64,000 nt of DNA, taken from positions 139,438,001 to 139,502,000 of the forward strand of contig OX638149.1 in the NCBI GenBank assembly GCA_951804945.1. Direction: 5' to 3'. This DNA is from Podarcis cretensis (lineage: Eukaryota). Both the position numbers and the translations under genes were made by a program. Below are positions 1,637-63,320 of the stretch, piece by piece. The notes under the pieces were generated by a model. It was given only the letters and a program-made list of their open reading frames with translations, had not been told where the DNA came from and made no database searches. Positions within the stretch are counted from its first letter, which is position 1, and each line of letters opens with the position of its first letter.

Positions 1637-2148
1637 CAGTGGTAAGAAGCTGTGCCTTAGTTTTTGAACGTTCTGGAAGTTCCAGAACTGATTAAGTTTG
1701 GCACTTTTGTTTTTGCTACTTATTTTGTGTTTTTGTTTTTGAGGCTTTTTCAGTTAATTTGTTTTTGTGACTGTGTGGAACCCAGTTCAGCTACTGATTG
1801 ACCGACTGTGTGACTGCAGAAATAGATAAAAGCCCCCCCCCCCATCCAAACAATGACTATTATCAGTGCAGGTAAGAAAATAATAATAATTTTAATTTTT
1901 ATCATCTACAATACTGTCTTATTTATTTTATAGTACAGTACATTGATTATTGCTTTCATTTTATGGATCAGTGGTCTCGTTAGATAGTAAAATTCATGTT
2001 AAATTGCTGTTTCAGGGGTTGTTTTTAAAAGTCTGAAACGGATCAATTCATTTTGCATTACTTTCTATGGGAAAGTGCACCTTGGTTTTGAAATGCTTTG
2101 GTTTTGGAACGGACTTCCGGATTAGGTTTGAGAACCAAGGTGTCACTG
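1637..2148. mobile_element. Non-autonomous Tc1/mariner (Tigger/pogo-like) DNA transposon
   Basis: TA|CAGTGGT...(g)ccttagtttttgaac at the left and gagaaccaaggtgtcactg|TA at the right. Same terminal inverted repeat (TIR) type as the MITEs at 9447, 11872, 35112 and 60307. The left TIR appears to carry a ~10-bp insertion. Confidence 0.7.
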
Positions 2149-2216
2149 TACAGCCTTTTGGGAAAGGCAGAGCAAATTCTTCCTCCATGCCCCGCCTTTT
2201 TCAGTGAGTGCCTCCG

Positions 2217-2217
2217 T

Positions 2218-2277
<60 letters not shown>
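2217..2277. repeat. Compound (TG)n(AG)n microsatellite
   Basis: Seen directly. Confidence 0.95.
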
Positions 2278-2279
<2 letters not shown>

Positions 2280-2520
2280 CAGAATGAAAATGAAAATTAG
2301 TGTGTTGAAATAGTGAAGACCCAAGCTGGGCTGAGATATCTAAGGAGGCCTTTACAGTGTCAACCATGCACTATGGTACTGAAACTTAATACAGCATCAT
2401 ATACATACAAAAATTGTAAATAGCACTTCAGAACAAGCAGCAGAAGTTCTGGGGGAGTTAAAATGGAGTTTTCCTTTTGCACTTCTTGAGCACACTTAAA
2501 GTTCGGTGAGTTTGAAGCAT

Positions 2521-3626
2521 GTTGTTGTTTAGTCGTTTAGTCGTGTCCGCCTCTTCGTGACCCCATGGACCAGAGCATGCCAGGCCCTCCTGTCTTCCAC
2601 TGCCTCCCACAGTTTCCTCAAACTCATGCTGGTAGCTTTGAGAACACTGTCCAACCATCTCATCCTCTGTCGTCCCCTTCTCCTTGTGCCCTCCATCTTT
2701 CCCAACATCAGGGTCTTTTCCAGGGAGTCTTCTCTTCTCATGAGGTGGCCAAAGTCTTAGAGCCTCAGCTTCAGAATCTGTCCTTCCAGTGAGCACTCAG
2801 GGCTAATTTCCTTCAGAATGGATAGGTTTGATCTTCTTGCAGTCCATGGGACTCTCAAGAGTCTCCTCCAGCACCATAATTTAAAAGCATCAATTCTTCT
2901 GCGATCAGCCTTCTTTATGGTCCAGCTCTCACTTCCATACATCACTACTGGGAAAACCATAGTTTCAACTATATGGGCCTTTGTTGGCAAGGTGATATCT
3001 CTGCTTTTTAAGATGCTGTCTAGGTTTGTGATTGCTTTTCTCCCAAGAAGCAGGCGTCTTTTAATTTCATGACTGCTGTCACCATCTGCAGTGATCATGG
3101 AACCCAAGAAAGTAAAATCTCTCACTGCCTCCATTTCTTCCCCTTCTATTTGCCAGGAGGTGATGGGACCAGTGGCTATGATCTTAGTTTTTTTGATGTT
3201 GAGCTTCAGACCATATTTTGCGCTCTCCTCTTTCACCCTCAATAAAAGGTTCTTTAATTCCTCCTCACTTTCTGCCATCAAGGTTGTGTCATCTGCATAT
3301 CTGAGGTTGTTGATATTTCTTCCAGTGATCTTAATTCCGGCTTGGGATTCATCCAGCCCAGCCTTTCACATGATGAATTCTGCATATAAGTTAAATAAGC
3401 AGGGAGACAAAATGCAGCCTTGTCGTACTCCTTTCCCAATTTTGAACCAATCAGTAGCTTCTTGTCCCACATAGAGATTTCTCAGGAGACAGATGAGGTG
3501 ACCAGGCACTCCCATTTCTTTAAGAACTTGCCATAGTTTGCTGTGGTCGACACAGTCAAAGGCTTTTGCATAGTCAATGAAGCAGATTGTTTTTCTGGAT
3601 GTTTTTCTGGAACTCTCTAGCTTTCT
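2521..3626 (-). mobile_element. BovB (RTE-clade) LINE, 5'-truncated, ~1.1 kb
   Basis: ORF pieces translate to BovB RT C-terminal sequence (MAESEEELK..GLKLNIKKTKI..MVFPVVMYGSESWTIKKA..RRIDAF.LWCWRRLLRVPWTARRSN..MRREDSLEKTLMLGK). The (CAA)n-type 3' tail is at 2521-2530. Confidence 0.95.
2757..3281 (-). pseudogene. BovB ORF fragment (RT C-terminal part), ending at a premature TAA
   Basis: 174-aa ORF in the track. The in-frame continuation 2529-2741 resumes after the stop. Confidence 0.85.
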
Positions 3627-5341
3627 TGAGATGGTTTATTAGCCTGAGTGCCCAGCCATTTGAAAGTTAGCTGGTGTCTTAGTGTACAGAAATTCTTGAA
3701 ACAAGGTTAATTAAACATGTTAATTAAACAATTTTCTAGGCCTTTGTTAAATTAACAGGAGTTCAGGGTCATTCATACAGATTAGCATTGTGCCTTATAA
3801 CGTTTTGATATATATGGAAAACATCTGCTATTTAAAGAAAAGAGAACAACAGAATTCAAAGGTTGACCCACTTCTTTGAAGACTAACGGCTCATTTCAAA
3901 TTCTTCTGAACTCGCACCCTTTTACTGAGTGTTCAGCACTTGTTTAGTTTAGGACTGTTTGATCATTTAGCAAATTAACATAGTCTCGGCTTCTGAAGGG
4001 GATATGTTAGTCAAGCCAATTCAAATAACAAAAAAGCAAATGCTTTAGAAGCACTTACCTTTACTGACAACCCCCCCCCCCCCCCAAGACCCAGCAACTC
4101 CTTTTGCTGAGACTTTAACGCATTAGTAGGAGCTTTGGTGGTTTTGTGGCGCGGCAGCGGGCGTTCTGGACCGGCTAATATGTTGCAGCCAAGTTTCCAT
4201 CCACTTAGCCTGATCTCTGGCTGTGAGATCTACGAAGAAACCCTGGAGGGAGGCTGATTTCACAATCAGTTGATGAGATTGTCATTTTCCACTTAATACC
4301 CTGTTGTTATCTCTCAACTAATCTGACATGTGTGAAGCTCTGTCAAACAATCCATGGCTGTGGGGCATCTGTCCTGGGCATGTTAGTATAAAAAAGGGAA
4401 GAGTTGTTTAAAGGTAACTCATTCATGCTGAAGTTTTTGTTGTTGGAAAAACAAGGAGATATGATGTAGATGGATTGTGGCAGTTAGGATTCCTTTGGCA
4501 AGAAACCTTGTCTTGTGCATGGAATATACTTCACAGGCAGAAAACGATCCATTGTGCTGATTTCATCTCCCTTCATATTCACAAAATATAAAATGTTTGG
4601 AGAACTCTGCATATGCAAGGCAACCTGTTTCCATTGGGAGAGCTCCATTTTGAAAATGTAAATTGCATAATAAAAGGTAAGCACACTTGAACATGTGTAG
4701 AGGGCCTTTCTCTGACCACTGATGAGCAGCTCTCTAACTTGCCTACCTGCATTTCATCTTTCAGGGGAAGAAGTATGATTTCCAGGCAAGTTTCACTGTC
4801 GACATTTCTCATTTTCAAAACAAAAGAATAGCATAAGCTGCCCTTCCTGTTTCTGTAGCTTGGTAACTGGGCTCCTGTAAAATTAGGAAAGCAGGAAGAA
4901 TACATGAAAATGTTTAGAAACAGCTTCTGTGACTTCCTTCTCTGCTACTGTGTTCTTCTGCCTTGTATCACCTGGAGGCAAAGGGTGTGTTTATGGTCAG
5001 TGTGTGTGACTGTTTCAGTTAATGAAGAAAGAACAAATGACAATGGCCTTGCTTGCATGTCGCAGAAAGCCAAACCATGGTTTACCGGGAATTGTGCAAA
5101 CGTGTGGGCTGCTAGATAGGAGCTTGCAGCTGCGTTGCTGCTCTCGCTATTTCCTACTCCTGTGCCATGCTGAATTGAGCCAAGTTTTGGCTTAGCGTGT
5201 CCTCTGAACCTGAACTTCTGGTTATGTTTTCTTCTTGCTACCCAGAAGCTGTAGCTTTGGCCATAGCGATGTTCAAACAGAGCCTATGTCATCATGTTGA
5301 AGATCGGGGGGGGGGGCTGTTCTTTCTTTCCCTCCTTCCAT

Positions 5342-10110: not shown

Positions 10111-10230
10111 CCTGCCTTCTGTGTGCAGAAGATCCTGTTTGATGACAGCATCAGGTGGTTGTAATAGATGTTCCTTTCTAAGCAATTTAATATCACAATT
10201 ATTTCATAATTTTTCTCCATTACCCAGCCC

Positions 10231-10307
10231 GTTGTTGTTTAGTCGTTTAGTCGTGTCTGACTCTTCGTGACCTCATGGACCAGAGCATGCCAGGCACTTC
10301 TGTCTCC
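10231..10307 (-). mobile_element. BovB 3'-terminal stub (~77 bp)
   Basis: Near-identical to 2521-2595. TSD ttacccagccc at 10220-10230 and 10308-10318. Confidence 0.9.
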
Positions 10308-15709: not shown

Positions 15710-16620
15710 GCAGCTCAAGAGAACAGTCTGCAAAGAAGTGTGTGGATTTCAGCAGATTTAATCCAAATGACATGGATGGGATTGCATCGTTTATTCTGCA
15801 TGTCCTGATTTTATTGAGAGGTAAAACCTGTTCAGACAATATACCACCCATTATTAGTTTCCTACCATCTTAACAACAACCCAACCCATACTATTCCAAC
15901 TTCCGAGTTTGAAACCAGAGGTTGGAAAAGCAAGTCCACTCCCCACTTTGCTTTACTTTTTTAGGAGGGACTAGTACCCAAATTAGTTTAGGGCCAGGCC
16001 AAAGCTTTGTCCTTTTAGAGCCTAATGGATGCCCAAATGGTTTGTGGCTCAGGCTGCTCGTCCTGTTATCCAGAAACACCTGCTTTCAACAAGACAGAGA
16101 CATATAGTAACAAATGGCTTTGGGTTGCAAACCAACTATTGGGGAGCCAAATTGTTGTAACAAAACTCTAGGAACACTGCCAAGCTCTTCTGGAGCACAT
16201 GGGAAGCCACATTTTTTATTCTAAGCAAATAAAGGAATTTTCAGCTGACACATTAAATGCATCCTTTTAACCATTTTATTGCATTTTACATGTTGGTAGT
16301 TTGAAAGCATATCCTCATATATATATTTTCTAGTTAAATGCTTTTTGTCTTTAAGTCCCCTCAAAGCAGGTTATATGCTGTAATTAAATAATAATGTAAA
16401 ACTATATAATGCTTTCTTAGAAGCACCTCTGATTCTTTATTTCCAATACGATGTTGTGCTATTTGGAAGTTAAAATGAGGAAACTTGGGGGACCAAAGCC
16501 AGGATGGTTTTGGATGTATCTTATCACTAGCGTCTTAAAACCATTTTAGAAATACCTGAGACTAAGGGAGAGTTTTCACCAAGGCAGTAAACCTGTGTCT
16601 AGGAGGTACTACTTTAGGAA

Positions 16621-17040
16621 TAGTATCATAGAGTTGGAAGAGACCACAAGGGCCATCGAGTCCAACCCCCTGCCAAGCAGGAAACACCATCAGAGCACTC
16701 CTGACATATGGTTGTCAAGCCTCTGCTTAAAGACCTCCAAAGAAGGAGACTCCACCACACTCCTTGGCAGCAAATTCCACTGTCAAACAGCTCTTACTGT
16801 CAGGAAGTTCTTCCTAATGTTTAGGTGGAATCTTCTTTCTTGTAGTTTGGATCCATTGCTCCGTGTCCGCTTCTCTGGAGCAGCAGAAAACAACCTTTCT
16901 CCCTCCTCTATGTGACATCCTTTTATATATTTGAACATAGCTATCATATCACCCCTTAACCTCCTCTTCTCCAGGCTAAACATGCCCACCTCCCTTAGCC
17001 GTTCCTCATAAGGCATCGTTTCCAGGCCTTTGACCATTTT
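16621..17040 (-). mobile_element. CR1 LINE 3' fragment (young)
   Basis: Five differences over ~415 bp from 30709-31123. Encodes [22 protein letters not shown]. Confidence 0.95.
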
Positions 17041-21586: not shown

Positions 21587-21940
21587 TATGAAAGAGAAAA
21601 GTGGCTTCAGAAATGGGGATGGGAAGGTGAAAGGCAAGCTCATGGGGTGGGAAAGAGAAGCCTTTTCCTTCCCTTAATGTCGAGGAATGGCAGGGGGGTT
21701 GTCGAATGAGATTAGGATAGCCAGTGGAAATAAAAATTTACTGTACACTGTTGCTTAGAATTCAAGAGGAAAAATCACATGACCTTAGCTTTAGGCATTG
21801 AGCTGGCTATGTGTTTTTTAAAACTTACAATAAATTAAAAAGGAGACATGTTTCAAAAGATAAAATTCCATTACGATATATACAGATTGTGAATAAATGT
21901 TGAGAAAGCTGGGGATTCTTGACTTAATTGGCATTCCCCA

Positions 21941-22434
21941 AGCAGAGACATCACCTTGCCAACAAAGGTCCATATAGTTAAAGCTATGGTTTTCCCAGTA
22001 GTGATGTATGGAAGTGAGAGCTGGACCATAAAGAAGGCTGATCGCCGAAGAATTGATGCTTTTGAATTCTGGTGCTGGAGGAGACTCTTGAGAGTCCCAT
22101 GGACTGCAAGAAGATCAAACCTATCCATTCTGAAGGAAATCAGCCCTGAGTGCTCACTGGAAGGACAGATTCTGAAGCTGAGGCTCTAAGACTTTGGCCA
22201 CCTCATGAGAAGAGAAGACTCCCTGGAAAAGACCCTGGTGTTGGGAAAGATGGAGGGCACAAGGAGAAGGGGACGGCAGAGGACGAGATGGATGGACAGT
22301 GTTTTCAAAGCTACCAGCATGAGTTTGACCAAACTGTGGGAGGCAGTAGAAGACAGGAGTTCCTGGCGTGCTCTGGTCCATGGGGTCACGAAGAGTCGGA
22401 CGCGACTATACAACTAAAGAACAACAACAACAAC
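21941..22434 (+). mobile_element. BovB LINE 3' fragment (~490 bp)
   Basis: Encodes LPTKVHIVKAMVFPVVMYGSESW...LKLRL*DFGHLMRREDSLEK; (CAA)n tail. Confidence 0.95.
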
Positions 22435-23624: not shown

Positions 23625-26340
23625 TATTAGGAGACGCTTGTGTGTTTGCCCTATTTCCCGATCCCTTCGCTCCCCATCTTAAATGCCCGTTAGAGTTTGA
23701 ACACAGCCAGAAAAAGTTTGTTGCCTGATATTGGCTTGCATATTTATTTCCCAGAACCAGACAAACACTTTCTTTAATATGACTCTCCTACGCTGAAACC
23801 TGTGTTTTGTTTCTAATATATTCTCTTATGTCCACTATTACATGATTTTCAGTTTTAACTCCCCATTTTACCAATTTCTTTTCTCTGTTGTGGAATTCAA
23901 CCCAAAATGCCCTGTGTTGAAACAGAGCTTTCCCAAAACAGTGTGAAAACTGGTTATCCTTGCATCATGGACTTTAATGCAGATGTGTAAGTTTGCCTGC
24001 GTGGCTGAACCTTTGCCACAGTTGTTTGTGTCACCCTCCATTTTCTAGGTCACATTTGGAGCCATGCCATTTCCACGGCAGCCCTTTCGGGACATTTCCA
24101 CTGCTTTCTTCTCCTTCTAGCTGTTTGAAATGTATGTTCAGGAGCTTCTCGAGTGGTCCCTAGGTTGCTTCTACTAACGTCTAGAATCACACTGAATTTT
24201 GAAGAATCCAATATGTGTGGGCACCAATGGATCAAATCTAAGACAAATTCTATACGCATTTTGACTTTAAAAGGGTGGATAGTATGCACATGTGTTGAGT
24301 TGTTCTTCATATTGAAAATGAAGCGCTACTGAATCAACCTTGACAAAATCAAGACACTGCAGGCAAGAAGCAGCAAACGCTCTTTTGCTCAGAAATGTAC
24401 ACACTCTCCTGATCCCTCTGCTGCAGTTGGGAGAACAAACAGCAACCGACTTCCATTTTTCATACTTCTCAGCAAGTGTGAAAGTGTGTTTAGATACCAG
24501 GGCATGTCTTAATCTGTATTTTGACAAATGCTTTTCTTGTTTCCGTCAGTGCTTTCTCCCATTTTTTCCTTCTCATCAGGTAGCTACTTTCCTCATGGTT
24601 AAGAACTAGCGCCCCAACGTAACAGCACGGGTGAGATCAGCAAAACCAAAACAGTATTTCAAAACATTCCCCTCTCCTGGCAATCTTTGTTCTCTTTCAG
24701 ATCCCAATAATGCAGATTTTGATCTCTATAATTTGGTCATAGATATGAAGCTTATAGATATGAAGCTTAGGATCATGTTTTCGCTTATTGAAAAGATCAC
24801 CTAAGCCTTTATGTTTAATTCAGATGAACTGCTGTCATTCATAGAAGTTAAAGGATGATTATGTCCACGGTACAGTGCTGTAATTATTATTATTTTTAAA
24901 AAGAAAAAGGATTAATCCTAAAGATCTTGGCTTTACTAGAAGCTGCACAAAAACCTGCACAAATTATTTAAGTTCTTGGGGGAATGATTATTTTTATTAT
25001 CTCGCTGCCCTATTTTTGAAGGGGTGTGTCCTTTTCCCCCCTTTGCACTGCGTCTTGCTGCAAGAGCAGCAGCCGAGCAAGCCCAAATCTCTCTTTATTT
25101 TTTACAGTGGTGCTCCACAGTGTGTGTTCGCTATGACTGATAGACCTGTCAGTCTTATCCCCAAACCAAAGCAATTGCCTCTCTGATCCACTCTGTTTCC
25201 ACAAGCCTAGGGAGTGAATCAACTGTTAAACCTTGTATGTTTGCATCCATAGTGACAGCTGAGGCATAGTGTAAAAATTTGGGGAAAGAGGGAAGATACC
25301 AATTTTATTAGTTATTTTAAAAAAATAACCTCTAAATACAGAATGTGGCAGCTGCCTGGTATGTTGAGAATGTCAGATTTAAATTTATTTGGGGGGGGGG
25401 GGGTTTTAGCCCTCATTATTTACCTGGCAAAAGTTTGGAGAAGCCAATAAGTTTCCAGTCATTACAGCAAAGTGCCTCTTCACTTTAGTTGTTGTTGTTC
25501 CCAGGGCATGTTAGAACAATGTAAAGTTAAAAATTAAAAACCATTAAAACAGATTATAAGCACAGGAATAGGGTGGGCACCGAAAACACATATCTCAGAT
25601 GTCAAATGCCCCCATTGCTGTCCACTTCCTTTCACAAGTAGTGTTATGAGTTTTCTTGTAATGAATGAATTCTTAGCACATAATTCCAACGAACAGCGCG
25701 CAGCCAGCCCCCCACCAGTTGCTTGACAACTGCCTTTTTCCAGTGGGGAGCAGGAGAATGAAAAGAGGGGAGTCTGTTTGGGTCATTTCTCATCTATTCT
25801 TGGATATCACAATGTTACTATTATGTTCCATGTTATTCTCTGGTAATACTGTGCAGTATAGATGAAACATTATGGGATAATCAACACCTATCAAGGGCTG
25901 TTGCTTCTCTCTTGGCTCCTCCAAAATACAGTGAATATTGCGTAGCAACAAATAAATGTTTGATGACTCGATACATATGCAATGAAAGTGACTTTTTATA
26001 TCGTTTAAATCCATTCAGTTATTTATTTTCATGTTTGCAATTGCCGACATCTCAAGACAGAAATAAAATGAGTATGTCACCCTGGCTTGCAGTTACATTT
26101 GCACAATTTTCATTTCAGATAATGTAACAGGTGCATTTCTGTCTGATGATGGGCGCTGCAGAGTTTATTGTTTTAAAGGATGATATATTTCTGTTTACCC
26201 TGAAATTAATCATGATGAAATACCAAAAGATCTACATCTTTCTGAGACATTGGCAGGAAGGTATTGAGAGATTGCCTCTCCCATGGCGTTTGTTCACCTT
26301 TGTGGGTAGTTGCGGAATAGATGCAGAATGTAAAAGCTCT

Positions 26341-28378
26341 TTAAAAAAAAAAAAGTGATATTTTATTAAGTTTTTAACAAGAGAAAAGTTACAAAACGAT
26401 AAACAAAAAACACAAGAAAAATACAAAAACCAAAATTTAACATAAAAAGAAAAAGAAAAAAGAAAAAAGAAAAATCCCTCTTTTTAACTTCTCACCGCTC
26501 ATTTACTTATTTTCCTGACTTCCTCACACCTCCCTTTTTTGTATTCCATTTAAAAATTGGTTCAGCAAATTCATACCCTCTTAATTTACCCTTAATTATT
26601 TATCCTCACGGGATATTCTTGCATATTCTTATTTTACCAAACCTTTCTGCTAAAGCCAATTAATTCCTTTCCAGCACATTCTTATATTTCATTAGTATTA
26701 CACTAATTCCAAAGATTATATATATATATATAAATTCTCATTCTGGTTTTATCCAACGTCCCTTCTTCCTGGTTTCGGGTTATGTCAGTCCTTTCAACCA
26801 TTATATCCTGTCCATCAATCTGGTGTTCTAATGTCCGAGGCTCTCGGGTCTCTTCTATGCCCCCTCTGCAAGTTTTCTTGTTCCTGTTTGTACTTGCACG
26901 CTTCCTTGTCCCTTGTTGGATTCTTTCGTAGTTTCTTCCCTTTCTCCTTGGGGAGTGAGTCTCCGGGGAATTCCATACAGTAATAATCTCCATTTTCTTT
27001 CCTCAGATTGTCCCATTCCCCACTAACCCACTCACCTGTGTTAATTTTGTAATCCAAAAAGTAGTTGTTCCAGAAATATTTATCAACTTGTTTCACAGCC
27101 CCACCAGAGCTAAGGACTTTCTTAACTCCAAGATCTTGCAGACACTCTCCAAAATCAGTCTTCCAGTGTTGCAGCTTTTGGTCATGCGGGACTTTAGATC
27201 TCTGTAACTTTTGAGGCGCAATCACCTCCTCTTCCATCTTCATCTGCCCTTGGACTTGCCTTATTGAACCAGTTTCCTGGATTGGTTGTTGTAAGATTTC
27301 TTTATCTTCGTTTCCTGTTGGTTCATATTTACTAGCTGCAGCAGAAATAAAATCCAACTTTTCATTCATCAAAGTCACTTTCTCATCCAACTGCTGCAGC
27401 ATAGTGTTTATTTTGCCAAGGGCAGAGAGTAAAACTTCCTCCCTATTCATTTCTGTTCAAGGTCAAATAGCTGGTCCCACGGTCTAATTTTCACAGCTGT
27501 TATATCTTCCCTGTAGATAGCAGCAACAAGCTGACAAGCTCCCTCTAGGGGACACAGTTTCTATTTAACTTCCATCTTTAAAATGTATCCAACAAAGGAA
27601 AATTCACTTTCGATTTTCCAATACTTTGTTTCCTTACAATACAATACAAAAAAGCAGAAAGCAGCATTGACGTTATTTTGTTTCTCTTTTATTTCTATCT
27701 GTCAAAAGTGTTCCATTTTCAATTTCAATTAATGGACATCTCCGGCAATTCCTGTCCTGACGACCCGTCCCCAGGTTTGGGATGATGGAAACTTATATTC
27801 TTTTACTCTCTCTGCAGGATTAAGAAGTCAAAATTTCTTCCCCTCTTTTCTCCTGCTGTCAAGGGGGTTTTGATGGTTATAGATGCAGGAAATTTCAATC
27901 TTAAAATCAATTTTCCAAGCGGTTTAGCTTGCAAAGTCTTTTGCTTCAGTCTATTTACAAAAAGCGGAAGGCGGACTTCCTGTTTAGACCTTCCCGCTTC
28001 GTTGCCTAATTCATAAAATTTTCTTAACCAAATCTTCCGTTTTTACTCACGGGTGCTTGTTTAAAGTTGAATTGTCACAGGAAAGAGGACAGTGCTCTCC
28101 GGCATCGGCTATGCAGCTTCGCTCTGCAGAAGTAGCGATTGACTCTCAGCACCGCGCCAAACACCCCGTCCTGCTCCGGAGCCCTTTGCAGGGTTCCTTT
28201 GCCAATTGGGGGGGGGCGCAAAAGGTGCCCGCCGAGTCCCACGGTCGCAGGCTTCACCGCCTGTGGTTTTCAAGAGGGTCCCCGCTTCGCTGTAGCGGTA
28301 GGACCCGATTTCTGCGGGGCTTTCTCCCTCTAAGTTAGAGGGAATCCGCCATTGCCGATGGCGCCACCTCCGGAAGTC
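26341..28378 (-). mobile_element. Full-length non-autonomous L1-like (HAL1-like) retroelement, 2,038 bp
   Basis: Perfect 17-bp TSD cagaatgtaaaagctct (26324-26340 / 28379-28395). 5' end GACTTCCGG..AATGGCGG with a CpG-rich leader; AATAAA at 26362-26367 near the 3' end. One ORF, no RT or endonuclease. Confidence 0.8.
26815..27450 (-). CDS. 211-aa orphan ORF inside the L1-like element; N-terminal heptad (coiled-coil-like) segment and basic C-terminus
   Basis: Intact ATG-to-stop ORF. LLSALGKINTMLQQLDEKVTLMNEKLDFISAA shows heptad periodicity. No homologue recognised. Confidence 0.55.
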   Translation of the reverse strand: MNREEVLLSALGKINTMLQQLDEKVTLMNEKLDFISAAASKYEPTGNEDKEILQQPIQETGSIRQVQGQMKMEEEVIAPQKLQRSKVPHDQKLQHWKTDFGECLQDLGVKKVLSSGGAVKQVDKYFWNNYFLDYKINTGEWVSGEWDNLRKENGDYYCMEFPGDSLPKEKGKKLRKNPTRDKEACKYKQEQENLQRGHRRDPRASDIRTPD

Positions 28379-28926
28379 CAGAATGTAAAAGCTCTAAGTA
28401 AACTGATGACTTACCAAAAGAAGATCAACTTTGTCTCAGAAGAAAGCAGCGACCTCAAGTCTGACTGGAGTCCCTGGACTTTGATACAGTGGGTTTGGAC
28501 ATGCATGTGGGTTGCTGATGGGGAGGCTTGCATTCTGAGATTTTAGGAAACTGCCACTCTCTCAGCCCCAAACAGGGACCCAAGTTTCATGATTAGAAGG
28601 AATTGTATCTTGCAACCTAGGGACATAAGTGCATTTTGTGTCCTGCTTATTAAATTGTTGGCCTTTTTGGCTGGGTATCAAGCTTCTTTGTCTTTTGCTA
28701 GAGAGAAGAGGCTGAAAGTTGCCACCTGGCTGCTTTTTTCTTCATAGTTCCTCCCTGACCAGGAAGGGTCTCAGAGGTTCTTTCTCTGGGTCTCTCTTTT
28801 CCTCTTCTTTTATATGTGACTCTCCTGCCATGCCCACATTTCAGGACCCTTTCCTTGCTCACAAATAGCTCCTGATGAACAAGCAGGCCACTCCTCATGA
28901 GGTGGCCATGCTCTCTGAGCCTACAG

Positions 28927-29062
28927 CAGGCATAGGCAAACTTGGCCCTCCAGATGTTTTGGGACTACAATTCCCATCATCCCTGACCGCAGGTTCTGTT
29001 AGGTAGGGATCATGGGAGTTGTAGTCCCAAAACATCTAGAGGGCCGAGTTTGCCTATGTCTG
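28927..29062. mobile_element. Fold-back hAT (Charlie-like) MITE, 136 bp
   Basis: ~57-bp inverted arms with 5 mismatches. TSD gcctacag / gcctagag. Confidence 0.88.
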
Positions 29063-29124
29063 GCCTAGAGATTTGCCTCAGGCTTCAGGAGGGAGGGAGG
29101 TATCTCCCCCAGGCTGCCCTCGGA

Positions 29125-29508
29125 CTAGGAGTGGAAGGACGTATCAATCCACTACTCTCTGCTTCTCATTTTTCCAATCCAGTCTTCATGAATTCTTCAT
29201 GAAAATTCATAAGCATTTTTAGTGCAAATTTATGCTACTAAATACATCTTTATGCAGTTTTGACTAATGTACAGTTTTCCCTAATGCAATGCATTTTTCT
29301 ATGTTATTAGCACTAATATGTTAATTTTTACACACAATCTCCCTAACATATACATTTTTGCAAACATTTGTTGGTGAACTTGATCACTGAATTCAGACAA
29401 GTGAATTTTGAAGGATGGCTGCATTTCAGTCCTTGTATTCTCTTGGAAAGTGTGAATTTGATAGATTCATCATTAAATGCAAATTGAATCTGATTTCTCT
29501 CCATCTCT
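29125..29508 (+). repeat. Old AT-rich interspersed repeat (TAGGGATG-terminated family)
   Basis: ttctcatttttccaatc motif shared with the 48292 copy; ends ccatctcta. Confidence 0.5.
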
Positions 29509-30695
29509 ACCTGGGACTGGCCACCTATTGCTTCTTTGACAGAATTGTTGCTTCCTCCATGAGTACCCCCCTCCCCCAATCCAGGACTGCACTTTCTCTT
29601 TCCTTCAATCCCAATCTGGGACTCCATTGCACACCTGGGACCTCGGCAAGCTAGTTTGCCTCTGGATCTGTACAGAAATCTTGTCCCTTTTTAATGTAAA
29701 CAAGCCATGAGCACCCTACACAGTAATCATATATTTGGGTTCCACAGAGAAACCTCCTTGAATCCTTAAAATGCAGCTGTTGACTTTCTGAATTTGTTCT
29801 TGCCTGCGTTGCTCTGCTGAAGTGTGTGGGTGTGTTGAAGGTAATGTGATGGTATTTTGTACTTTTCAGCATGAGTTGTTTTTATTTTTTAGCAACCCCT
29901 TATTTTCTAACTGAGGGCTTTAATGTAAACATGCCTGAAATTAAAAGAACTTAAACACTGCAGGAAAGTGAATTATAGGTTGACAAGTCAATTACTTCAG
30001 ATGCATAACTTGCTTCTTATGCTAGACTTCTTCCTGCCCATATTGGAATGTCACTCATGCCCTTTTAAATTATGCCATAGTATAACACCTCATATTTGAA
30101 AAGTTAGCTATGTTTGTCTTTGGGAGCAATACCAATACAGTGCTTCACTGTTCCCATACACTTTTTAGAAAACAAAGAACTGAACTTCAGATGTATAATC
30201 TTAAAAGCATCTCTTCATTTGCACCATGGGACATTAATTTCATACTTTGTGCCCCAAAGTAACTATAAATCATTTCCTTTGATTAAAGAAAAAAAGGGGG
30301 GTTGGGAATCAAAGAAAGCAAACGCATAATTTTATTCAGTCATGCTGGGAGAGGAGTGGGTATCAAGTCTGTAAAAGAACAGGCAATGAAAACTTGGCTT
30401 TAGCAGGGGTGGAGTTCCCATGTCTGCCTATCAGGGAATTCTTTGTCTGCTGTGTTCACGCAACACGTTGAGGATGAATCCAATTTGGTACATCACTACG
30501 GCTGGCTGGAAACACAGGCTTCCAAAATCATTAGCTCTTAGATTAAAATGCTGCCTATAAAGATAAGGGAGCTGTTCCAATAACCCTTTAATCAGTTTTG
30601 TTTTTTAGAAGAGTAAAAGTGTAGTCATAAAATAATTCATTTTTAGAACATCTCCATATTACACTAAATAGTGAAGAAGAAGAAGAATTTTCTCT

Positions 30696-33644
30696 TAGAA
30701 TCATAGAATCATAGAGTTGGAAGAGACCACCAGGGCCATCGAGTCCAACCCCCTGCCAAGCAGGAAACACCATCAGAGCACTCCTGACATATGGTTGTCA
30801 AGCCTCTGCTTAAAGACCTCCAAAGAAGGAGACTCCACCACACTCCTTGGCAGCAAATTCCACTGTCAAACAGCTCTTACTGTCAGGAAGTTCTTCCTAA
30901 TGTTTAGGTGGAATCTTTTTTCTTGTAGTTTGGATCCATTGCTCCGTGTCCGCTTCTCTGGAGCAGCAGAAAACAACCTTTCTCCCTCCTCTATGTGACA
31001 TCCTTTTATATATTTGAACATGGCTATCATATCACCCCTTAACCTCCTCTTCTCCAGGCTAAACATGCCCAGCTCCCTTAGCCGTTCCTCATAAGGCATT
31101 GTTTCCAGGCCTTTGACCATTTTGGTTGCCCTCCTCTGGACACGTTCCAGTTTGTCCGTGTCCTTCTTGAACTGTGGTGCCCAGAACTGGACACAGTACT
31201 CCAGGTGAGGTCTGACCAGAGCAGAATACAGTGGCACTATTACTTCCCTTGATCTAGATGCTATACTCCTATTGATGCAGCCCGGAATTGCATTGGCTTT
31301 TTTAGCTGCCGCGTCACACTGTTGGCTCATGTCAAGTTTGTGGTCAACCAAGACTCCTAGATCCTTTTCACATGTACTGCTCTCAAGCCAGGTGTCACCC
31401 ATCTTGTATTTGTGCCTCTCATTTTTTTTGCCCAAGTGCAATACTTTACATTTCTCCCTGTTAAAATTCATCTTGTTTGTTTTGGCCCAGTTCTCTAATC
31501 TGTCAAGGTTGTTTTGAAGTGTGATCCTGTCCTCTGGGGTGTTAGCCACCCCTCCCAGTTTGGTGTCATCTGCAAATTTGATCAGGATGCCCTTGAGTCC
31601 ATCATCCAAGTCGTTGATAAAGATGTTGAATAAGACCGGGCCCAAGACAGAACCCTGTGGCACCCCACTAGTCACTCTTCTCCAGGATGAAGAGGAACCA
31701 TTGATGAGCACCCTTTGGGTTTGGTCAGACAGCCAGTTACAAATCCACTGAGTGGTAGCATAGTCAAGTCCGCATTTTACCAGCTTCTTTACAAGAATAT
31801 CATGGGGCACCTTGTCAAATGCCTTGCTGAAATCAAGGTAGGCTACATCCACTGCGTTCCCTTCATCTACCAGGCTTGTAATTCTGTCAAAAAACGAGAT
31901 CAGGTTAGTCTGACATGACTTATTTTTCAGAAATCCATGCTGACTATTGGTGATCACAGTATTCCTTTCTAAGTGCTCACAGACTGTTTGCTTAATGATC
32001 TGCTCCAGAATCTTCCCTGGTATTGATGTCAGACTGACTGGGCGGTAATTATTTAGGTCCTCTCTTTTCCCCTTTTTGAAAATAGGGACAACATTTGCCC
32101 TCCTCCAGTCTGCCGGGACTTCGCCTGTTCTCCAGGAATTCTCAAAGATGACTGCCAGTGGTTCTGAGATCACATCTGCCAGTTCTTTTAATACTCTTGG
32201 ATGCAGTTCATCTAGCCCTGGAGACTTGAATACATCTAAACTAGCCAAGTATTCTTGTACTATCTCCTTAGTTATTCTGGGCTGTGTTTCCTCTGCTGAA
32301 TCATTTGCTCCAAATTCTTCAGGTCGGGCATTGTTTTCTTTATCAGAGAAGACTGAGGCAAAGAAGGCATTGAGGAGTTCAGCCCTTTCTGTGTCCCCTG
32401 TTTGCATTTCACCATCTTCTCCTCTGAGTGACCCCACTGTTTCTTTGTTCTTCCTTTTGCTACGAACATACCCATAAAAGCCTTTTTTGTTGCTTTTAAC
32501 CTCTCTAGCAAGCCTGAGTTCATTCTGTGCTTTAGCTTTTCTGACTTTGTGTCTACACGTGCTGGCTATTTGTTTGAATTCCTCTTTGGTGGTTTCCCCC
32601 CTTTTCCATTTTTTGTACACATCCTTTTTTAATCTTAACTCAGTTAAAAGTTCTTTAGATAGCCACCCTGGCTTCTTTAGGCACCTTCCATGTTTCCGTC
32701 TCATTGGTATTGCCTGAAGTTGTGCTTTTACTATCTCCCTCTTAACAAACTCCCAGCCATCATGAACTCCCTTTCCTTTTAGTATTACTGTCCATGGGAT
32801 CTCACCCAGCACTTCCCTACGTTTTATGAAGTCGGCTTTCTTAAAGTCAAGAAATTGAGTCCTAGTATGCTTGGCTGCTCCTTTCCGCTGTATAGTAAAC
32901 TTCAGAAGAGCATGATCACTCGCGCCTAATGATCCTTCCACTTCTACCCCACTAACCAGGTCATCAACATTGGTTAGGACCAGATCTAAAATGGCTGTTC
33001 CTCTTGTTGCTTCTCCCACTTTCTGGACAACGAAGTTGTCTGCAAGGCCAGTGAGGAATCTGTTTGACCTTATGCTCTTGGCTGAGTTTGACATCCAGCA
33101 AATATCCGGGTAATTAAAGTCCCCCATTACTACTATCTCCCTTCCTTTTGCATGCTTGGCCATCTGTTCCAGGAAGGCATCATCTATGTCCTCCGTTTGG
33201 CTTGGGGATCTATAGTAATCTCCCACAATGAGGTCCCTGTTATCCTTCTCTCCCTTAATTTTGACCCAAATGCTCTCACTTTGGCTTTGAGGTTCTAAAT
33301 CTTGGATCTCTTCACAGGTATACACATCCCTGACATATAACACCACTCCTCCTCCTTTCTTGTCTGGTCTGTTTCTCTGAAATAGATTGTATCCCTCCAT
33401 TATTACATTCTAGTCGTGGGACTTATCCCACCAGGTTTCAGTGATGCCTATTATGTCATATTTAGTTTGCTGTACCAAGAGCTCAAGCTCATCTTGTTTA
33501 TTACCCATGCTTTGCGCATTAGTGTACAGACATTGAAGTCCATTAATCATTCCCCCGTGTCTCTTATTTAAGGATTCTTTCCTCCCACCACTAGGTCTGT
33601 GTGCTGTTTGCTCCATTTGGTCTATGACATTTGGTCTATGACAT
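30696..33644 (-). mobile_element. CR1 LINE, ~2.95 kb, essentially complete ORF2, 5'-truncated
   Basis: (ATTCTATG)n tail at 30696-30715, followed upstream by APE endonuclease and RT coding sequence. Confidence 0.97.
30866..33400 (-). CDS. CR1 ORF2 (APE endonuclease + reverse transcriptase), 844-aa open segment
   Basis: Endonuclease motifs VMGDFN, LDLVL, SDH; RT motifs [32 protein letters not shown]. The N-terminal piece CLYTNAQSMGNK..IGITETWW (within 33410-33616) is in frame behind one TAG. Confidence 0.93.
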
Positions 33645-43274: not shown

Positions 43275-44455
43275 TGATCAGTAGAATTTGAACTGAGTGA
43301 GTATATATTGAGTGTAAATGGGCAAGACGGGGCTTTCTTTGTATAAATAGAAGACAAAATGGCAAGCAGTACATGAGATAGTGGTAAGTGTGTCAAAGTA
43401 CAATGCAGAGCACAAGTGAACAGAATAGAATAGAATAGTCAAAACAAATGCGAGTACCAAACAACGTATAGTAAATAGTGGCTACAAGTGAATAATATAC
43501 CTAGCAAGATCAATACTGTGAATGACAAATTACAAAAACAGGTTCGATTGTGCAGCGTATCGACTACATCTGTGGTATTAAAGAAGAAGTTGGTGCTGCT
43601 TTCCTCTTCATCACACTAAGCAGGAAATTAGCTGTCATCTCGGTAATCCAACAGTCAGAATCCTGCAGAAGAAGGGACACTATCCAGGGCTGGATTGGGA
43701 GATGAAGCTTGTTCACGAGAGGAGTTAGAAACCGAGATCTTTCATCTGTCCAGTTGGGACAGAAGAGCATTACATGTTCCATAGTCTCCAGAGCCGTGTC
43801 ATTGCAGGTGCATGTTCTATTTGCGATGGAAACTCTGGAGTAACGACCCGACAGAACTGCTGTAGGAAAACAGTTGAGACGGGCACAGGTAAAGGCCCTT
43901 CGCTTAGCCTCCGATGGAATTGTGAAGCAGTATAAAGGGATTCCTTCAGGGGGTGGAATAGCTAGGGCTAAGCCTGAACACAGCCCTCTTGCATGGGAAG
44001 CTGTGTTAGAGAAGTCAAGTTGCTGTAGCTTCTTTTTGATTAGAGGCAGGGCCGCCGGGCTAATACACTCTAAGTTAAAAACAGTTTTGCGGTTCAAATT
44101 GAGAAGAGAGCGGAATTTGAGATTAATTGTAGTTTTCCAAGGAGAATTATGTATATCTCTTAAGATCAGATTGGAGAAACCACCTCTAATTCGAGCATCC
44201 GATGCTAGTAGGTGGGAGCTATAGGAAATGGCTCGACTCCATGCTCGTTTTACAATTGAGGGCTGGGCGAACTCAAGTCGTAGGGCTGCACCTGAGACAC
44301 ATCTCGGGACACTGGAAAGAGATCTCAGAAACATGTGAAGTGGGCGATCCAAGTTACCTGATATTGCTGTAGTCCATACTTCGCAGCCATATAATAATTT
44401 AGGGACAACTTTGGCATTAAATATTTGAATTGCTGCTGGAAGGTGTTTGCCGCTG
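43275..44455 (-). mobile_element. RTE-X-like LINE fragment (ORF C-terminus + 3' UTR)
   Basis: Open frame 44466-43564: PAAIQIFNAKVVPKLLYGCEVW..FLRSL..VPRCVS.AALRLE..RRAFT.ARLN..GRY..RTCTC..ET.EHVMLFC (C-terminal CCHC-type knuckle). The left boundary is approximate. Confidence 0.75.
43564..44352 (-). pseudogene. Non-LTR retrotransposon ORF C-terminal fragment with a Cys/His knuckle
   Basis: 262-aa ORF in the track. The frame extends upstream without a stop to 44466. Confidence 0.75.
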
Positions 44456-61973: not shown

Positions 61974-62879
61974 ATCTATTTGATTACAAATTCTGAAAAA
62001 CAACATTGGCAACAGCATAGCAAAAGAATTCATATTGGGGTTGCCTTGGAGTTTCAGAAATACCCAGAATGGGCAACAAATTCTGGGGTCTACCCCCATG
62101 ACTCTGAGGGAGGACTTTTGGGAGCCTCACAAAAATGCACACAGGAATGAGGAAGAGACCACTTAACCAAAAATCTATGGCTCAGGCTACTAAAGAATAG
62201 AACATGCATGAAAAACAACAACCCAACTTTCATTCAGTTTCCTAATCTGTGTCTCCAAGAAGTGCTGGCACCCAAATTAATTACGGTAGAACAGAGGGAA
62301 GGCCTGCATTTTTCACTTGCCTTTTCCTGCCAACTTGTTGGCATCGTCAAAAGGCTGCCTGCCTTTCTCCTTCTGGCTTCCTTTTTAAATTTAATGTTAT
62401 CTCTTGCTTTCAGTGTTGTTGTAAATTAAAATTAGTTGTTAACTTTAGGATGATGAGGTCATTATAATGCAACTCTTTTGTATATTGATTACATTTGAGC
62501 TTCATTTGTTTAATGCGTCATAGGGTTTAATAGGTCTTTCCAAACATCCCTCTCTCAGTGTAGGAGGTGGGGGAACAGAGAGTGGCAAAATAGATGGAAA
62601 GCAGATGCTCAGTTTAATTTGAAACAGTCGACTGAAATGGACTGAGCCACAGGCAGTTTACACTATCTGTGGAGGACCTGTCCCGTGAGAGCAAAAGACA
62701 AAAATGACGACTGGGAGAAAGGTATGAGCAGCGCAGACTTAACAAATCAGAAAGAGAAGAGCAGCTATTAAGGCCAAATTGGACGTTCCCCTCATCCCTG
62801 TCAACAGTGTTACCAACCGCATAAAAGATGAAACTCTGGCATGGGGTGGTGAAGGGGAAGAGGAAACATGGTTCCTCTA

Positions 62880-63320
62880 GGGCCGCCTTCCCCAGCCTGG
62901 TTCTTTGTGCATTGTTTTGGGTTACAGGGAGCCTCCGAAGATCGTGCGAAGCAGCTCTTCCTCCGGCGAGGAGGGAAGCCCCGCCTCCAGTGGGGAAGGG
63001 ATACAGGGATAAGAAGATGCTAGAGAGAGCCGCAACACGGAGCCTGAGCAAAGCGGGGGGGGGGGGGAGGCAAGTCCCCCTTTGCCAACACCCTCTCTCC
63101 GCAGTCGGTTTGCGCGCAGAGAGGGGAGGAGAAGGATGGGGGTCAAAAGACTGTTTTGCTGGGGAAGGTTTAAGGACCGCCCACTCCCAGATTCTGCTAG
63201 CGACTGAGCAGACACGGACTTGAGATGCTCTGCACTGTAAATGTTTTTGGACAGATACTAAAGCCTGGAAAAGACCGGTGGGAGTCTTGCCTGTTTGCTC
63301 TCGAGCAACCATGCCGGCAC
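62880..63320. promoter_or_regulatory. CpG-enriched non-repetitive segment; candidate promoter or first exon
   Basis: Local CpG cluster with GC-box-like motifs (ccccgcct, ccgccc) and no TIR or TSD. gcaaccATG at 63311. Confidence 0.3.

What the first reader, a model, noticed from the sequence alone, without database searches (positions are those of the whole stretch)
26341..28378. Complete 2-kb L1-like non-autonomous retroelement carrying an orphan 211-aa protein
Seen in the sequence: a perfect 17-bp TSD; a TT|AGAG insertion site on the sense strand; a 5' end GACTTCCGG..AATGGCGG with a ~340-bp CpG-rich leader; AATAAA just before the 3' end; and one uninterrupted ORF (26815-27450) with no RT or endonuclease. 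Established knowledge: L1s begin with a CpG-rich internal Pol II promoter carrying a YY1-type (ATGGCGG) site, L1 endonuclease cuts TT|AAAA-like sites, and HAL1 elements are L1 derivatives that encode only ORF1p. Inference: this element was mobilised in trans by L1 ORF2p. Its protein has a coiled-coil-like start and a basic tail, but I cannot see the RRM signature of ORF1p (R..N.RI.G.PE). It may be a new cargo protein of an undescribed lizard family, possibly one that co-assembles with or interferes with L1 ORF1p trimers. The perfect TSD and retained CpGs suggest the insertion is recent.
Basis: partly seen in the sequence, partly recalled or inferred. Interest (0 to 1): 0.8.

Follow-up and report, generated by a model that had tools for sequence, protein, structure and literature searches.

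The report
Lizard RT-less protein-coding retroposon copy
This is a young, complete copy of a lizard jumping element present in roughly a hundred or more copies; it has no copying enzyme of its own, so it must borrow one (most likely from L1), and it carries an intact gene for a small coiled-coil protein that matches no named protein family, L1 ORF1p included.

Summary
A 2,038-bp insert (26341-28378, sense on the minus strand) lies between perfect 17-bp direct repeats. A contig from a related organism carries the exact empty site with one repeat copy.

Public-run contigs show that the insert belongs to a multi-copy family. Thousands of contigs are 85-100% alike, and summed depth is about 100 times that of the single-copy flanks.

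The element has these parts:
- a CpG-rich head that starts with an ETS site and two YY1-like cores;
- a 211-aa ORF;
- AATAAA 21 nt before the end;
- no RT or endonuclease.

The protein has no Pfam or PDB match. It has six intact relatives of 174-206 aa and 27-50% identity; four are hypothetical proteins of Podarcis lilfordi and three come from Logan assemblies of unrecorded origin. They share an N-terminal amphipathic helix and a near-invariant C-terminal motif.

The copy has no poly(A) tail: it ends T12-AA. The protein is not a strict orphan.

Mobilisation by L1 fits the TSD, the T|A nick and the lack of CR1 or Bov-B tails, but it is inferred, not shown. No L1 ORF1p similarity was detectable.

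The scan has already noted many such "half-L1-like" elements elsewhere in this genome. Verdict: a real new variant of a known kind, of moderate interest.

The parts
26324..26340 (.). Left copy of the 17-bp target-site duplication (3' side of the element in sense orientation)
   Evidence: Identical to 28379-28395. About 0.04 such pairs are expected by chance in the window. The empty-site contig of X8 carries one copy.
26341..26354 (-). 3' terminus in sense: T12 followed by AA. There are only 2-3 A's where a poly(A) tail would be.
   Evidence: Read directly. The X1 contig matches 26141-26385 with 0 differences, so this is not an assembly slip.
26362..26367 (-). AATAAA polyadenylation hexamer, 21 nt upstream of the element's last base
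   Evidence: Motif scan at sense position 2012.
26341..26814 (-). 3' UTR of 474 nt. The last 140 nt are 64% T in sense, and the UTR contains a (TA)n run.
   Evidence: Composition. Other copies carry different T-rich fillers here (joints 26374->26489).
26499..26547 (-). Conserved 3'-UTR block with roughly 100 times the summed contig depth of the ORF, so it is shared with a much larger repeat family
   Evidence: read laying depth bins and loose ends at 26499 and 26546/7. No second copy in this window.
26815..27450 (-). Intact 211-aa ORF, stop codon included. It has an N-terminal amphipathic helix (res 3-41), an acidic or neutral middle, a basic tail (res 166-211, pI 10.1) and a conserved C-terminal motif.
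   Evidence: No Pfam or PDB match. Six homologues at 27-50% identity. Helix pLDDT is 83-89. Heptad a/d positions are hydrophobic at 10 of 12.
27451..28378 (-). 5' UTR of 928 nt with seven short uORFs of 2-29 codons
28079..28378 (-). CpG-rich head (first 300 nt in sense), the presumed internal Pol II promoter
   Evidence: GC 0.60-0.64 and CpG o/e 0.6-0.97. The promoter role is inferred.
28347..28377 (-). ETS-type ACTTCCGG at sense nt 2-9, with two YY1-like cores: CGCCAT at nt 16-21 and ATGGCG at nt 27-32
   Evidence: Motif scan. Binding is not tested.
28379..28395 (.). Right copy of the 17-bp target-site duplication (5' side in sense). The target reads TT|AGAG in sense.

Best explanation
The 2,038-bp unit is one daughter copy of a multi-copy, RT-less, protein-coding non-LTR retroposon family of lacertid (wall-lizard type) genomes.

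Proposed life cycle:
1. RNA polymerase II starts at the first base, directed by a promoter that lies inside the transcript: an ETS site, two YY1-like cores and a 300-nt CpG island. Each new copy therefore carries its own promoter.
2. The RNA is cleaved about 21 nt after AATAAA.
3. The RNA is translated into a 211-aa protein. Its N-terminal amphipathic helix probably mediates self-association, and its basic C-terminal part probably binds the element's own RNA, as ORF1p does for L1.
4. The RNA is reverse-transcribed at a staggered chromosomal nick by the endonuclease/RT of an autonomous LINE acting in trans, most likely a relaxed L1. This produced the 17-bp TSD.
5. In this copy, reverse transcription began at the very start of the tail, or on a deadenylated RNA, leaving only 2-3 A's.

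Shown: the insertion event, its recency, the multi-copy status, the absence of RT/EN, the conservation of the ORF, and the lack of any named domain.

Inferred: the promoter function, the protein's role, and L1 as the helper. Whether the protein is a remodelled ORF1p or a different gene remains open.
For: - Perfect 17-bp TSD.
- Exact empty site in organism D and filled junctions in organisms A and B.
- 1,733-3,671 contigs per run lie on the element at 85-100% identity; in X1, 271 of them are 99% or more alike. Summed depth is about 50-200 times that of the flanks. The flanks are single-copy.
- An in-frame 39-nt deletion variant occurs in three organisms.
- No RT/EN and no Pfam hit.
- Six intact homologues of 174-206 aa at 27-50% identity share the same N-terminal helix. 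The five whose C-terminus is present end in the same ...RASDIR(L/T)P(G/D) motif. Three deeply diverged ones coexist in Podarcis lilfordi.
- Where this copy differs from the family majority at T16, R150 and P202, the majority letter matches the residue seen in most or all of the closest homologues. This is as expected for a decaying daughter of a constrained master.
- The sense strand of the ORF is A-rich (36% A, 17% C).
- The nick is T|A.
- The element shares no 3' similarity with the CR1 and Bov-B copies in the window and has no CR1 octamer or Bov-B (CAA)n tail.
- L1-dependent tailless retrocopies are reported for a lizard (PMC5322556).
Against: - There is no poly(A) tail, and the last 140 nt of the sense strand are T-rich, which is atypical for L1 passengers.
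- No L1 sequence was available, so neither head nor tail could be tied to L1.
- One target site (TT|AGAG) cannot define an endonuclease preference.
- The short contigs do not prove that the amplified unit is the 2-kb form rather than pieces of a longer element.
- There is no evidence of transcription or translation. The one 'RNA?' run holds about as many family contigs as random genomic DNA would.
- The leader has seven upstream ATGs.
- The structure model is poor outside the helix (pLDDT below 50 for residues 42-187).
Confidence: 0.68

Rival explanations
1. True 'half-LINE': the ORF is the genuine ORF1 of a still unidentified autonomous lizard LINE (an L1 lineage with a strongly remodelled ORF1, or an L2/CR1-type element with an unclassified 'type V' ORF1). 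The 2-kb form arose by deletion of ORF2, so head, ORF and tail all descend from that LINE.
For: - The 3'-UTR block 26499-26547 and two 5'-UTR blocks are 10-100 times more abundant than the ORF. This is what is expected if they are shared with a larger LINE family that has many 5'-truncated copies.
- The layout of an N-terminal coiled-coil-like helix plus a basic region resembles ORF1 proteins that lack RRM/CCHC. ORF1p types III-V are reviewed in PMC5203782.
- Earlier notes of this scan describe L1-derived half elements in the same genome. These are leads only.
Against: - No protein longer than 206 aa and none carrying Transposase_22, RRM or CCHC was recovered, either with the single sequence against 1.84 billion representatives or with profiles of 3 and 5 members.
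- There is no Pfam or PDB similarity.
- The element has no stringent-type 3' microsatellite.
Confidence: 0.3
2. A burst of processed pseudogenes, or a retrogene family, from a highly expressed lineage-specific host gene, rather than a self-propagating retroposon.
For: - ETS and YY1 sites at a CpG-island start are typical of housekeeping host promoters.
- AATAAA with cleavage-site geometry fits an mRNA.
- Podarcis lilfordi homologues are annotated as ordinary hypothetical proteins.
Against: - There are on the order of a hundred or more copies, graded continuously from 85% to 100% identity, in three organisms.
- Several deeply diverged lineages (27-50% aa identity) each keep an intact ORF within one genome.
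- An in-frame indel subfamily exists.
- Many copies reach the very same 5' end (bin 28355-28436).
- No spliced parent or intron was seen, and no relatives occur outside lizard-type sources.
Confidence: 0.07
3. The element is mobilised by a non-L1 LINE of this genome (Bov-B/RTE, CR1 or L2), whose RT recognises part of the T-rich 3' UTR.
For: - There is no poly(A) tail.
- Bov-B makes TSDs of 10 bp or more that start with A after a T in Podarcis muralis (PMC13295347), and this TSD starts T|A.
- A young CR1 with an intact 844-aa EN/RT ORF lies 2.5 kb away.
- The abundant 3'-UTR block could be a recognition module.
Against: - BLAST finds no similarity to the CR1 or Bov-B copies in the window.
- The element does not end in CR1's ATGATTCT repeats or in Bov-B_PMu's (CAA)2-6.
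- The T run lies at -5 to -7, not about -10.
- The abundant block sits 160-200 nt from the end, not at it.
- AATAAA 21 nt from the end points to a polyadenylated Pol II RNA.
Confidence: 0.12

Closest known systems
HAL1 ('half-L1') elements of mammals (Bao & Jurka 2010, as summarised in PMC5322556)
   Same: It is RT-less and multi-copy, is transcribed from its own 5' region, encodes a single ORF upstream of a 3' UTR, is flanked by L1-size TSDs, and depends on a full-length LINE for EN/RT.
   Different: HAL1 encodes a recognisable L1 ORF1p and ends in poly(A). Here the protein has no detectable Transposase_22/RRM/CTD similarity, the copy ends in T12-AA, and descent of head and tail from L1 could not be tested.
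L1 ORF1p (type II, Transposase_22: coiled coil + RRM + CTD; PMC5203782)
   Same: It has an N-terminal amphipathic heptad helix and a basic region, sits as the first ORF after a long CpG-rich leader, and is A-rich on the sense strand.
   Different: It is only 211 aa with about 40 helical residues. No RRM or CTD was found by Pfam, by PDB sequence or profile search, or by searches of 1.8-5.8 billion proteins. Its conserved C-terminal ...GRDLRASDIRLPG motif has no counterpart that I know of (from memory).
Unclassified ('type V') ORF1 proteins such as zebrafish ZfL2-1 ORF1p (Nakamura et al. 2012, cited in PMC5203782)
   Same: A small LINE-associated protein without RRM or CCHC, built from a coiled coil plus a basic region. 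For ZfL2-1 this description rests on my recollection of the paper.
   Different: ZfL2-1 is part of an autonomous L2 with a stringent 3' tail, whereas this element has no RT.
L1-dependent tailless retropseudogenes (Noll et al. 2015, PMC5322556)
   Same: It is flanked by TSDs and lacks a poly(A) tail. That paper reports such copies in the green anole as the only non-mammalian vertebrate lineage in which they were detected.
   Different: Those are copies of small structured RNAs (tRNA, 5S, U2). This is a 2-kb mRNA-like, self-promoting, protein-coding unit.

Membership tests
HAL1 / half-L1 | Single ORF, no endonuclease or reverse transcriptase | tested here: met
   There is only one ORF above 100 aa in the 2,038 bp, and it has no RVT or Exo_endo_phos hit.
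HAL1 / half-L1 | The ORF encodes L1 ORF1p (Transposase_22) | tested here: not met
   No Transposase_22 at E<=10 in any of the three members scanned. No PDB ORF1p hit by sequence or profile. No ORF1p among the database hits.
HAL1 / half-L1 | Poly(A) tail | tested here: not met
   This copy ends T12-AA next to the TSD. The tails of other copies were not seen.
HAL1 / half-L1 | Variable-length TSDs of L1 size at a TT|AAAA-like site | tested here: met
   17-bp perfect TSD at a TT|AGAG site, plus an empty-site contig. This is a single site only.
HAL1 / half-L1 | 5' and 3' UTR sequence derived from an autonomous L1 of the same genome | not testable with these tools
   The window holds no L1 (one search found no similarity to anything else in it).
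HAL1 / half-L1 | Amplified as a family | tested here: met
   Thousands of contigs at 85-100% identity in three organisms, with depth about 100 times that of the flanks. That the 2-kb form itself is the amplified unit was not shown.
L1 ORF1p type II | Long trimeric coiled coil | tested here: inconclusive
   One confident helix at residues 3-41 (pLDDT 83-89), with 10 of 12 a/d positions hydrophobic. Oligomeric state is unknown.
L1 ORF1p type II | RRM and C-terminal domain | tested here: not met
   The model is below pLDDT 50 beyond residue 42, so no fold comparison was meaningful.
Bov-B/RTE-dependent non-autonomous elements (Sauria SINE type) | 3' end shared with Bov-B and ending in (CAA)n | tested here: not met
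   No similarity to the Bov-B fragments at 2520-3006 and 21940-22426. The end is T12-AA. Bov-B_PMu ends in (CAA)2-6.
CR1-dependent elements | CR1 3' stem region and ATGATTCT-type terminal repeats | tested here: not met
   The CR1 ends at 30703 and 16620 show these repeats. The element has neither the repeats nor any similarity.
Processed pseudogene of a host gene | Copy of a spliced mRNA from an intron-bearing parent gene, with daughters that do not propagate | not testable with these tools
   No host genome was available. The indirect evidence is against it: several deeply diverged intact lineages and an in-frame indel subfamily.

The most novel reading that the evidence does not exclude
Lacertid lizards harbour a diversified superfamily of protein-coding parasites of LINEs. 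Their protein is not a degraded L1 ORF1p but a distinct, convergently ORF1-like RNA-packaging or ORF2p-hijacking factor, built from a coiled-coil helix, a basic region and an invariant C-terminal ...RDLRASDIRLPG docking motif. This protein lets an RT-less RNA compete in trans for the LINE machinery, or damp the helper.
Probability: 0.3. Interest if true: 0.65.

Novelty: new variant of a known kind. Interest (0 to 1): 0.45.

Why it matters
Non-autonomous LINE passengers are usually non-coding (SINEs, SVA) or keep a recognisable ORF1p (HAL1). This is an abundant, young, self-promoting passenger that keeps an unrelated-looking small coiled-coil protein under constraint across deeply diverged lineages. 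That would show that cis-acting RNA-binding or assembly proteins of retroposons can be replaced or remodelled beyond recognition.

It would also give a tractable system for asking what minimal protein an RNA needs to capture a LINE reverse transcriptase in trans. It matters as well for lizard genome annotation, because relatives are currently filed as 'hypothetical proteins' in Podarcis lilfordi.

The near-tailless end adds one mRNA-sized example to the L1-dependent tailless insertions reported in lizards.

Tried and rejected
- Pfam on the ORF and on two homologues: only noise (CCDC53 at E 0.74, ORC2 at E 0.025).
- PDB sequence search (phmmer) and a profile of 3 sequences: nothing, or an epoxide hydrolase at E 1.5.
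- AlphaFold2 with 2- and 5-sequence alignments: mean pLDDT 43-44, with only residues 3-41 confident. I did not run fold search, because the tool itself warns that such models give meaningless matches.
- ESM Atlas: best hit 0.79 (a bacterial hypothetical protein). For P0004, plant Retrotrans_gag clusters at 0.81-0.86 with 145 or fewer shared features. This is below the tool's lead threshold and not backed by Pfam, so I rejected it as evidence.
- Rfam on 25000-30000: nothing within the element above noise.
- Search for further copies or related LINE heads and tails in the window, by blastn with word size 9 and by tblastn with four homologues: none.
- JGI metagenome scan with the family profile: no relative.
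- Scan-notes look-ups by sequence were blank.
- Expression: the only 'RNA?' run (X20, 15 Mb of contigs) holds 11 family contigs. That is roughly what random genomic DNA would give for a repeat making up about 0.03% of the genome, so I rejected it as evidence of transcription.
- Synonymous versus non-synonymous differences between this copy and the family majority: 6 to 8 over 14 listed sites. The sample is too small and is a selected list, so I did not use it as a selection test.
- DNA transposon, Helitron and LTR readings were rejected: there are no terminal inverted repeats and no LTRs, and a 17-bp TSD fits none of them.
Full report
**What is there**

On the minus strand, 26341-28378 is a 2,038-bp unit. 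It lies between two identical copies of CAGAATGTAAAAGCTCT, at 26324-26340 and 28379-28395, and the bases just outside differ. Setting aside Bov-B/SINE repeat copies, this is the only 17-mer direct repeat 300-8000 bp apart in the 64-kb window. About 0.04 such pairs are expected by chance.

Read in sense, the unit has five parts:
- a start of GACTTCCGG, which is an ETS-type site at nt 2-9;
- two YY1-like cores, CGCCAT at nt 16-21 and ATGGCG at nt 27-32;
- a 300-nt head with GC 0.60-0.64 and CpG o/e 0.6-0.97;
- a 928-nt leader with seven very short uORFs;
- one 211-aa ORF (26815-27450) and a 474-nt 3' UTR.

AATAAA sits 21 nt before the last base. The end reads AATAAA-ATATCAC-T12-AA. The last 140 nt are 64% T in sense, while the ORF is A-rich (36% A, 17% C).

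**Proof of insertion, and its age**

I laid Logan contigs of four public runs on 26141-28578.
- Run X8 (organism D) has a 1,330-nt contig that joins 26340 directly to 28405. It carries one TSD copy followed by the downstream flank. This is the empty site.
- Contigs of X1 (organism A; 0 differences over 26141-26385) and X4 (organism B) cross the filled junctions.
- Flank divergence from the window is about 0-1% for A and B and about 3% for D.

So the insertion postdates the split from D and predates the A/B split. The flanks are single-copy (depth 10-19 in X1 and X4, 102 in X8).

**It is a family, not a one-off**

On the element itself, 1,966 (X1), 1,733 (X4) and 3,671 (X8) contigs were laid at 85-100% identity. 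For X1 the breakdown is 271 at 99% or more, 552 at 95-99%, 745 at 90-95% and 398 below 90%. Summed depth over the body is roughly 50-200 times that of the flanks. The tool warns that summed depth is not a copy number, so I read it only as 'of the order of a hundred or more'.

Further details from the same call:
- The terminal bins on both sides are also far above flank depth, so many relatives reach the same 5' end and the same 3'-terminal segment.
- An in-frame 39-nt deletion variant (27262-27300) appears in contigs of all three DNA organisms.
- Three blocks are 10-100 times more abundant than the rest: 26499-26547 in the 3' UTR, and 27945-28026 and 28191-28272 in the leader. They must be shared with a larger family, which may be the helper LINE with its truncated copies, or sister RT-less families.

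The window itself holds no second copy and nothing similar to any part of the element.

**The protein**

Searches for known families found nothing:
- no Pfam family (best E 0.74);
- no PDB chain by sequence or by profile.

A word search, a full phmmer scan of 1.84 billion representatives and two profile searches found only six relatives, P0001, P0002, P0004, P0005, P0006 and P0007.
- They are 174-206 aa long and 27-50% identical to the window ORF.
- None has a Pfam domain.
- P0002, P0004 and P0005 are 'hypothetical predicted proteins' of Podarcis lilfordi. The other three come from Logan assemblies.
- No longer protein and no ORF1p-type protein was recovered.

The alignment shows two sub-clades. 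One has a lysine-rich basic stretch. The other has a 33-residue insert instead.

Two parts are kept throughout:
- The N-terminal helix (consensus LLxALCKTNALLEQLxEKxDLM) is shared by six of the seven sequences; P0001 begins within it.
- A near-invariant C-terminus, ...GHGRDLRASDIRLPG followed by the stop, is present in every sequence that reaches the C-terminus, which is all but P0006.

AlphaFold2 is confident only for residues 3-41 (pLDDT 83-89). The rest is below 50. That helix has hydrophobic residues at 10 of 12 a/d heptad positions. Residues 166-211 have pI 10.1.

Intact frames of the same length and the same end at 27-50% identity, three of them within one genome, argue that coding capacity is selected in the propagating lineages.

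The family-majority letters in the contigs fit this. Where this copy differs from them at T16, R150 and P202, the majority letter gives the residue seen in most or all of the closest homologues (A, M, L). This copy therefore looks like a slightly decayed daughter that is still open.

**Who moved it**

These features fit target-primed reverse transcription of a Pol II mRNA-like transcript by an enzyme supplied in trans:
- a variable-size 17-bp TSD;
- a nick between T and A (sense TT|AGAG);
- an internal promoter-like head;
- AATAAA at cleavage distance from the end;
- the absence of any RT.

The two LINE types actually present in the window are poor candidates:
- The CR1 at 30703-33400 has an intact 844-aa EN/RT ORF and ends in ATGATTCT repeats.
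- The Bov-B fragments belong to a family that ends in (CAA)2-6 in Podarcis muralis, with a T-run about 10 nt upstream of the TSD (PMC13295347).
- The element shares no sequence with either, has neither tail, and its T-run sits at -5 to -7.

A relaxed, poly(A)-using L1 is therefore the best candidate. Two papers are relevant: L1 TSDs start at TT|AAAA (same paper), and L1-dependent tailless retrocopies have been reported in the green anole, the only non-mammalian vertebrate lineage in which that study detected them (PMC5322556).

This remains inference. No L1 sequence was available for comparison, one target site is not a logo, and the missing tail is atypical.

**Comparison with known kinds**

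The element works like mammalian HAL1. It is RT-less, codes for one protein, is self-transcribed, is flanked by TSDs and depends on a full-length LINE (PMC5322556).

It fails two membership tests for HAL1. The ORF is not a recognisable L1 ORF1p (type II: coiled coil + RRM + CTD; PMC5203782), and this copy has no poly(A) tail. A third test, L1 ancestry of the UTRs, could not be run.

In layout the protein resembles the unclassified ORF1 proteins that lack RRM and CCHC. That is a resemblance, not a tested relationship.

Truncated ORF1 proteins can suppress L1 in trans (title and abstract of PMC5605252, seen).

**Earlier notes of this scan**

Look-ups show that first readers and follow-up agents have already described many 1.6-3.4-kb 'half-L1-like' RT-less retroposons on other DNA of this same genome. 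Some were read as L1 descendants with a cut-down ORF1. Others were read as carrying a small coiled-coil protein with no named family.

I took from them only two things: the lead that the genome is a wall lizard, and the fact that the class is common there. Sequence look-ups gave no link to my element. My own tests agree with the 'no named family' reading. They neither confirm nor contradict L1 descent.

**Limits**

- Both structure models are poor.
- Expression is unknown. The single 'RNA?' run contains no more family contigs than random DNA would.

**Verdict**

This is a real, young copy of a multi-copy, RT-less, protein-coding retroposon with an unclassifiable but conserved coiled-coil protein. 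That makes it a new variant of the half-LINE theme. It is of moderate interest, and the scan has seen it repeatedly in this genome.

Noticed in passing
window 30703-33400 (minus strand) and 16620-16919: A 5'-truncated CR1 LINE with an intact 844-aa ORF (Exo_endo_phos + RVT_1). Its 3' end is of classic CR1 type and finishes in ATGATTCT repeats. A second 300-nt 3' fragment 14 kb away is 99% identical, so this CR1 family is very young.
   Followed up: partly
window 28927-29062: A perfect-looking 58-nt-arm palindrome (91% complementary, 20-nt loop) lies 550 bp from the element. It scores 56 bits against Rfam mir-5408, below the 90-bit gathering score. It is most likely a MITE-type hairpin repeat rather than a confirmed miRNA gene.
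   Followed up: no
window 2520-3006 and 21940-22426; also 10226-10305: An inverted pair of 487-nt Bov-B-like LINE 3' parts, 95% complementary and 19 kb apart, with an RVT_1 remnant in ORF 2757-3281. A Sauria-SINE/Bov-B-like 80-nt piece lies at 10226.
   Followed up: no
window 43564-44352 (minus strand): A 262-aa ORF without a Pfam hit that contains a CxC...H....C motif. This is reminiscent of the C-terminal zinc knuckle of LINE ORF2 proteins, so it may be the tail of another LINE copy.
   Followed up: no
window 27262-27300 (within the ORF): Relatives in three organisms carry an in-frame 39-nt deletion here, in the poorly conserved linker of the protein. This is an ORF-preserving subfamily marker.
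   Followed up: no
window 26609-26616: Relatives in three organisms have about 37 extra nucleotides here, so this copy or its subfamily carries a 3'-UTR deletion.
   Followed up: no
window 62614-63312: A GC-rich stretch with overlapping ORFs of 232 aa and 131 aa on opposite strands and no Pfam hit. It looks like a CpG-island region rather than a coding gene.
   Followed up: no
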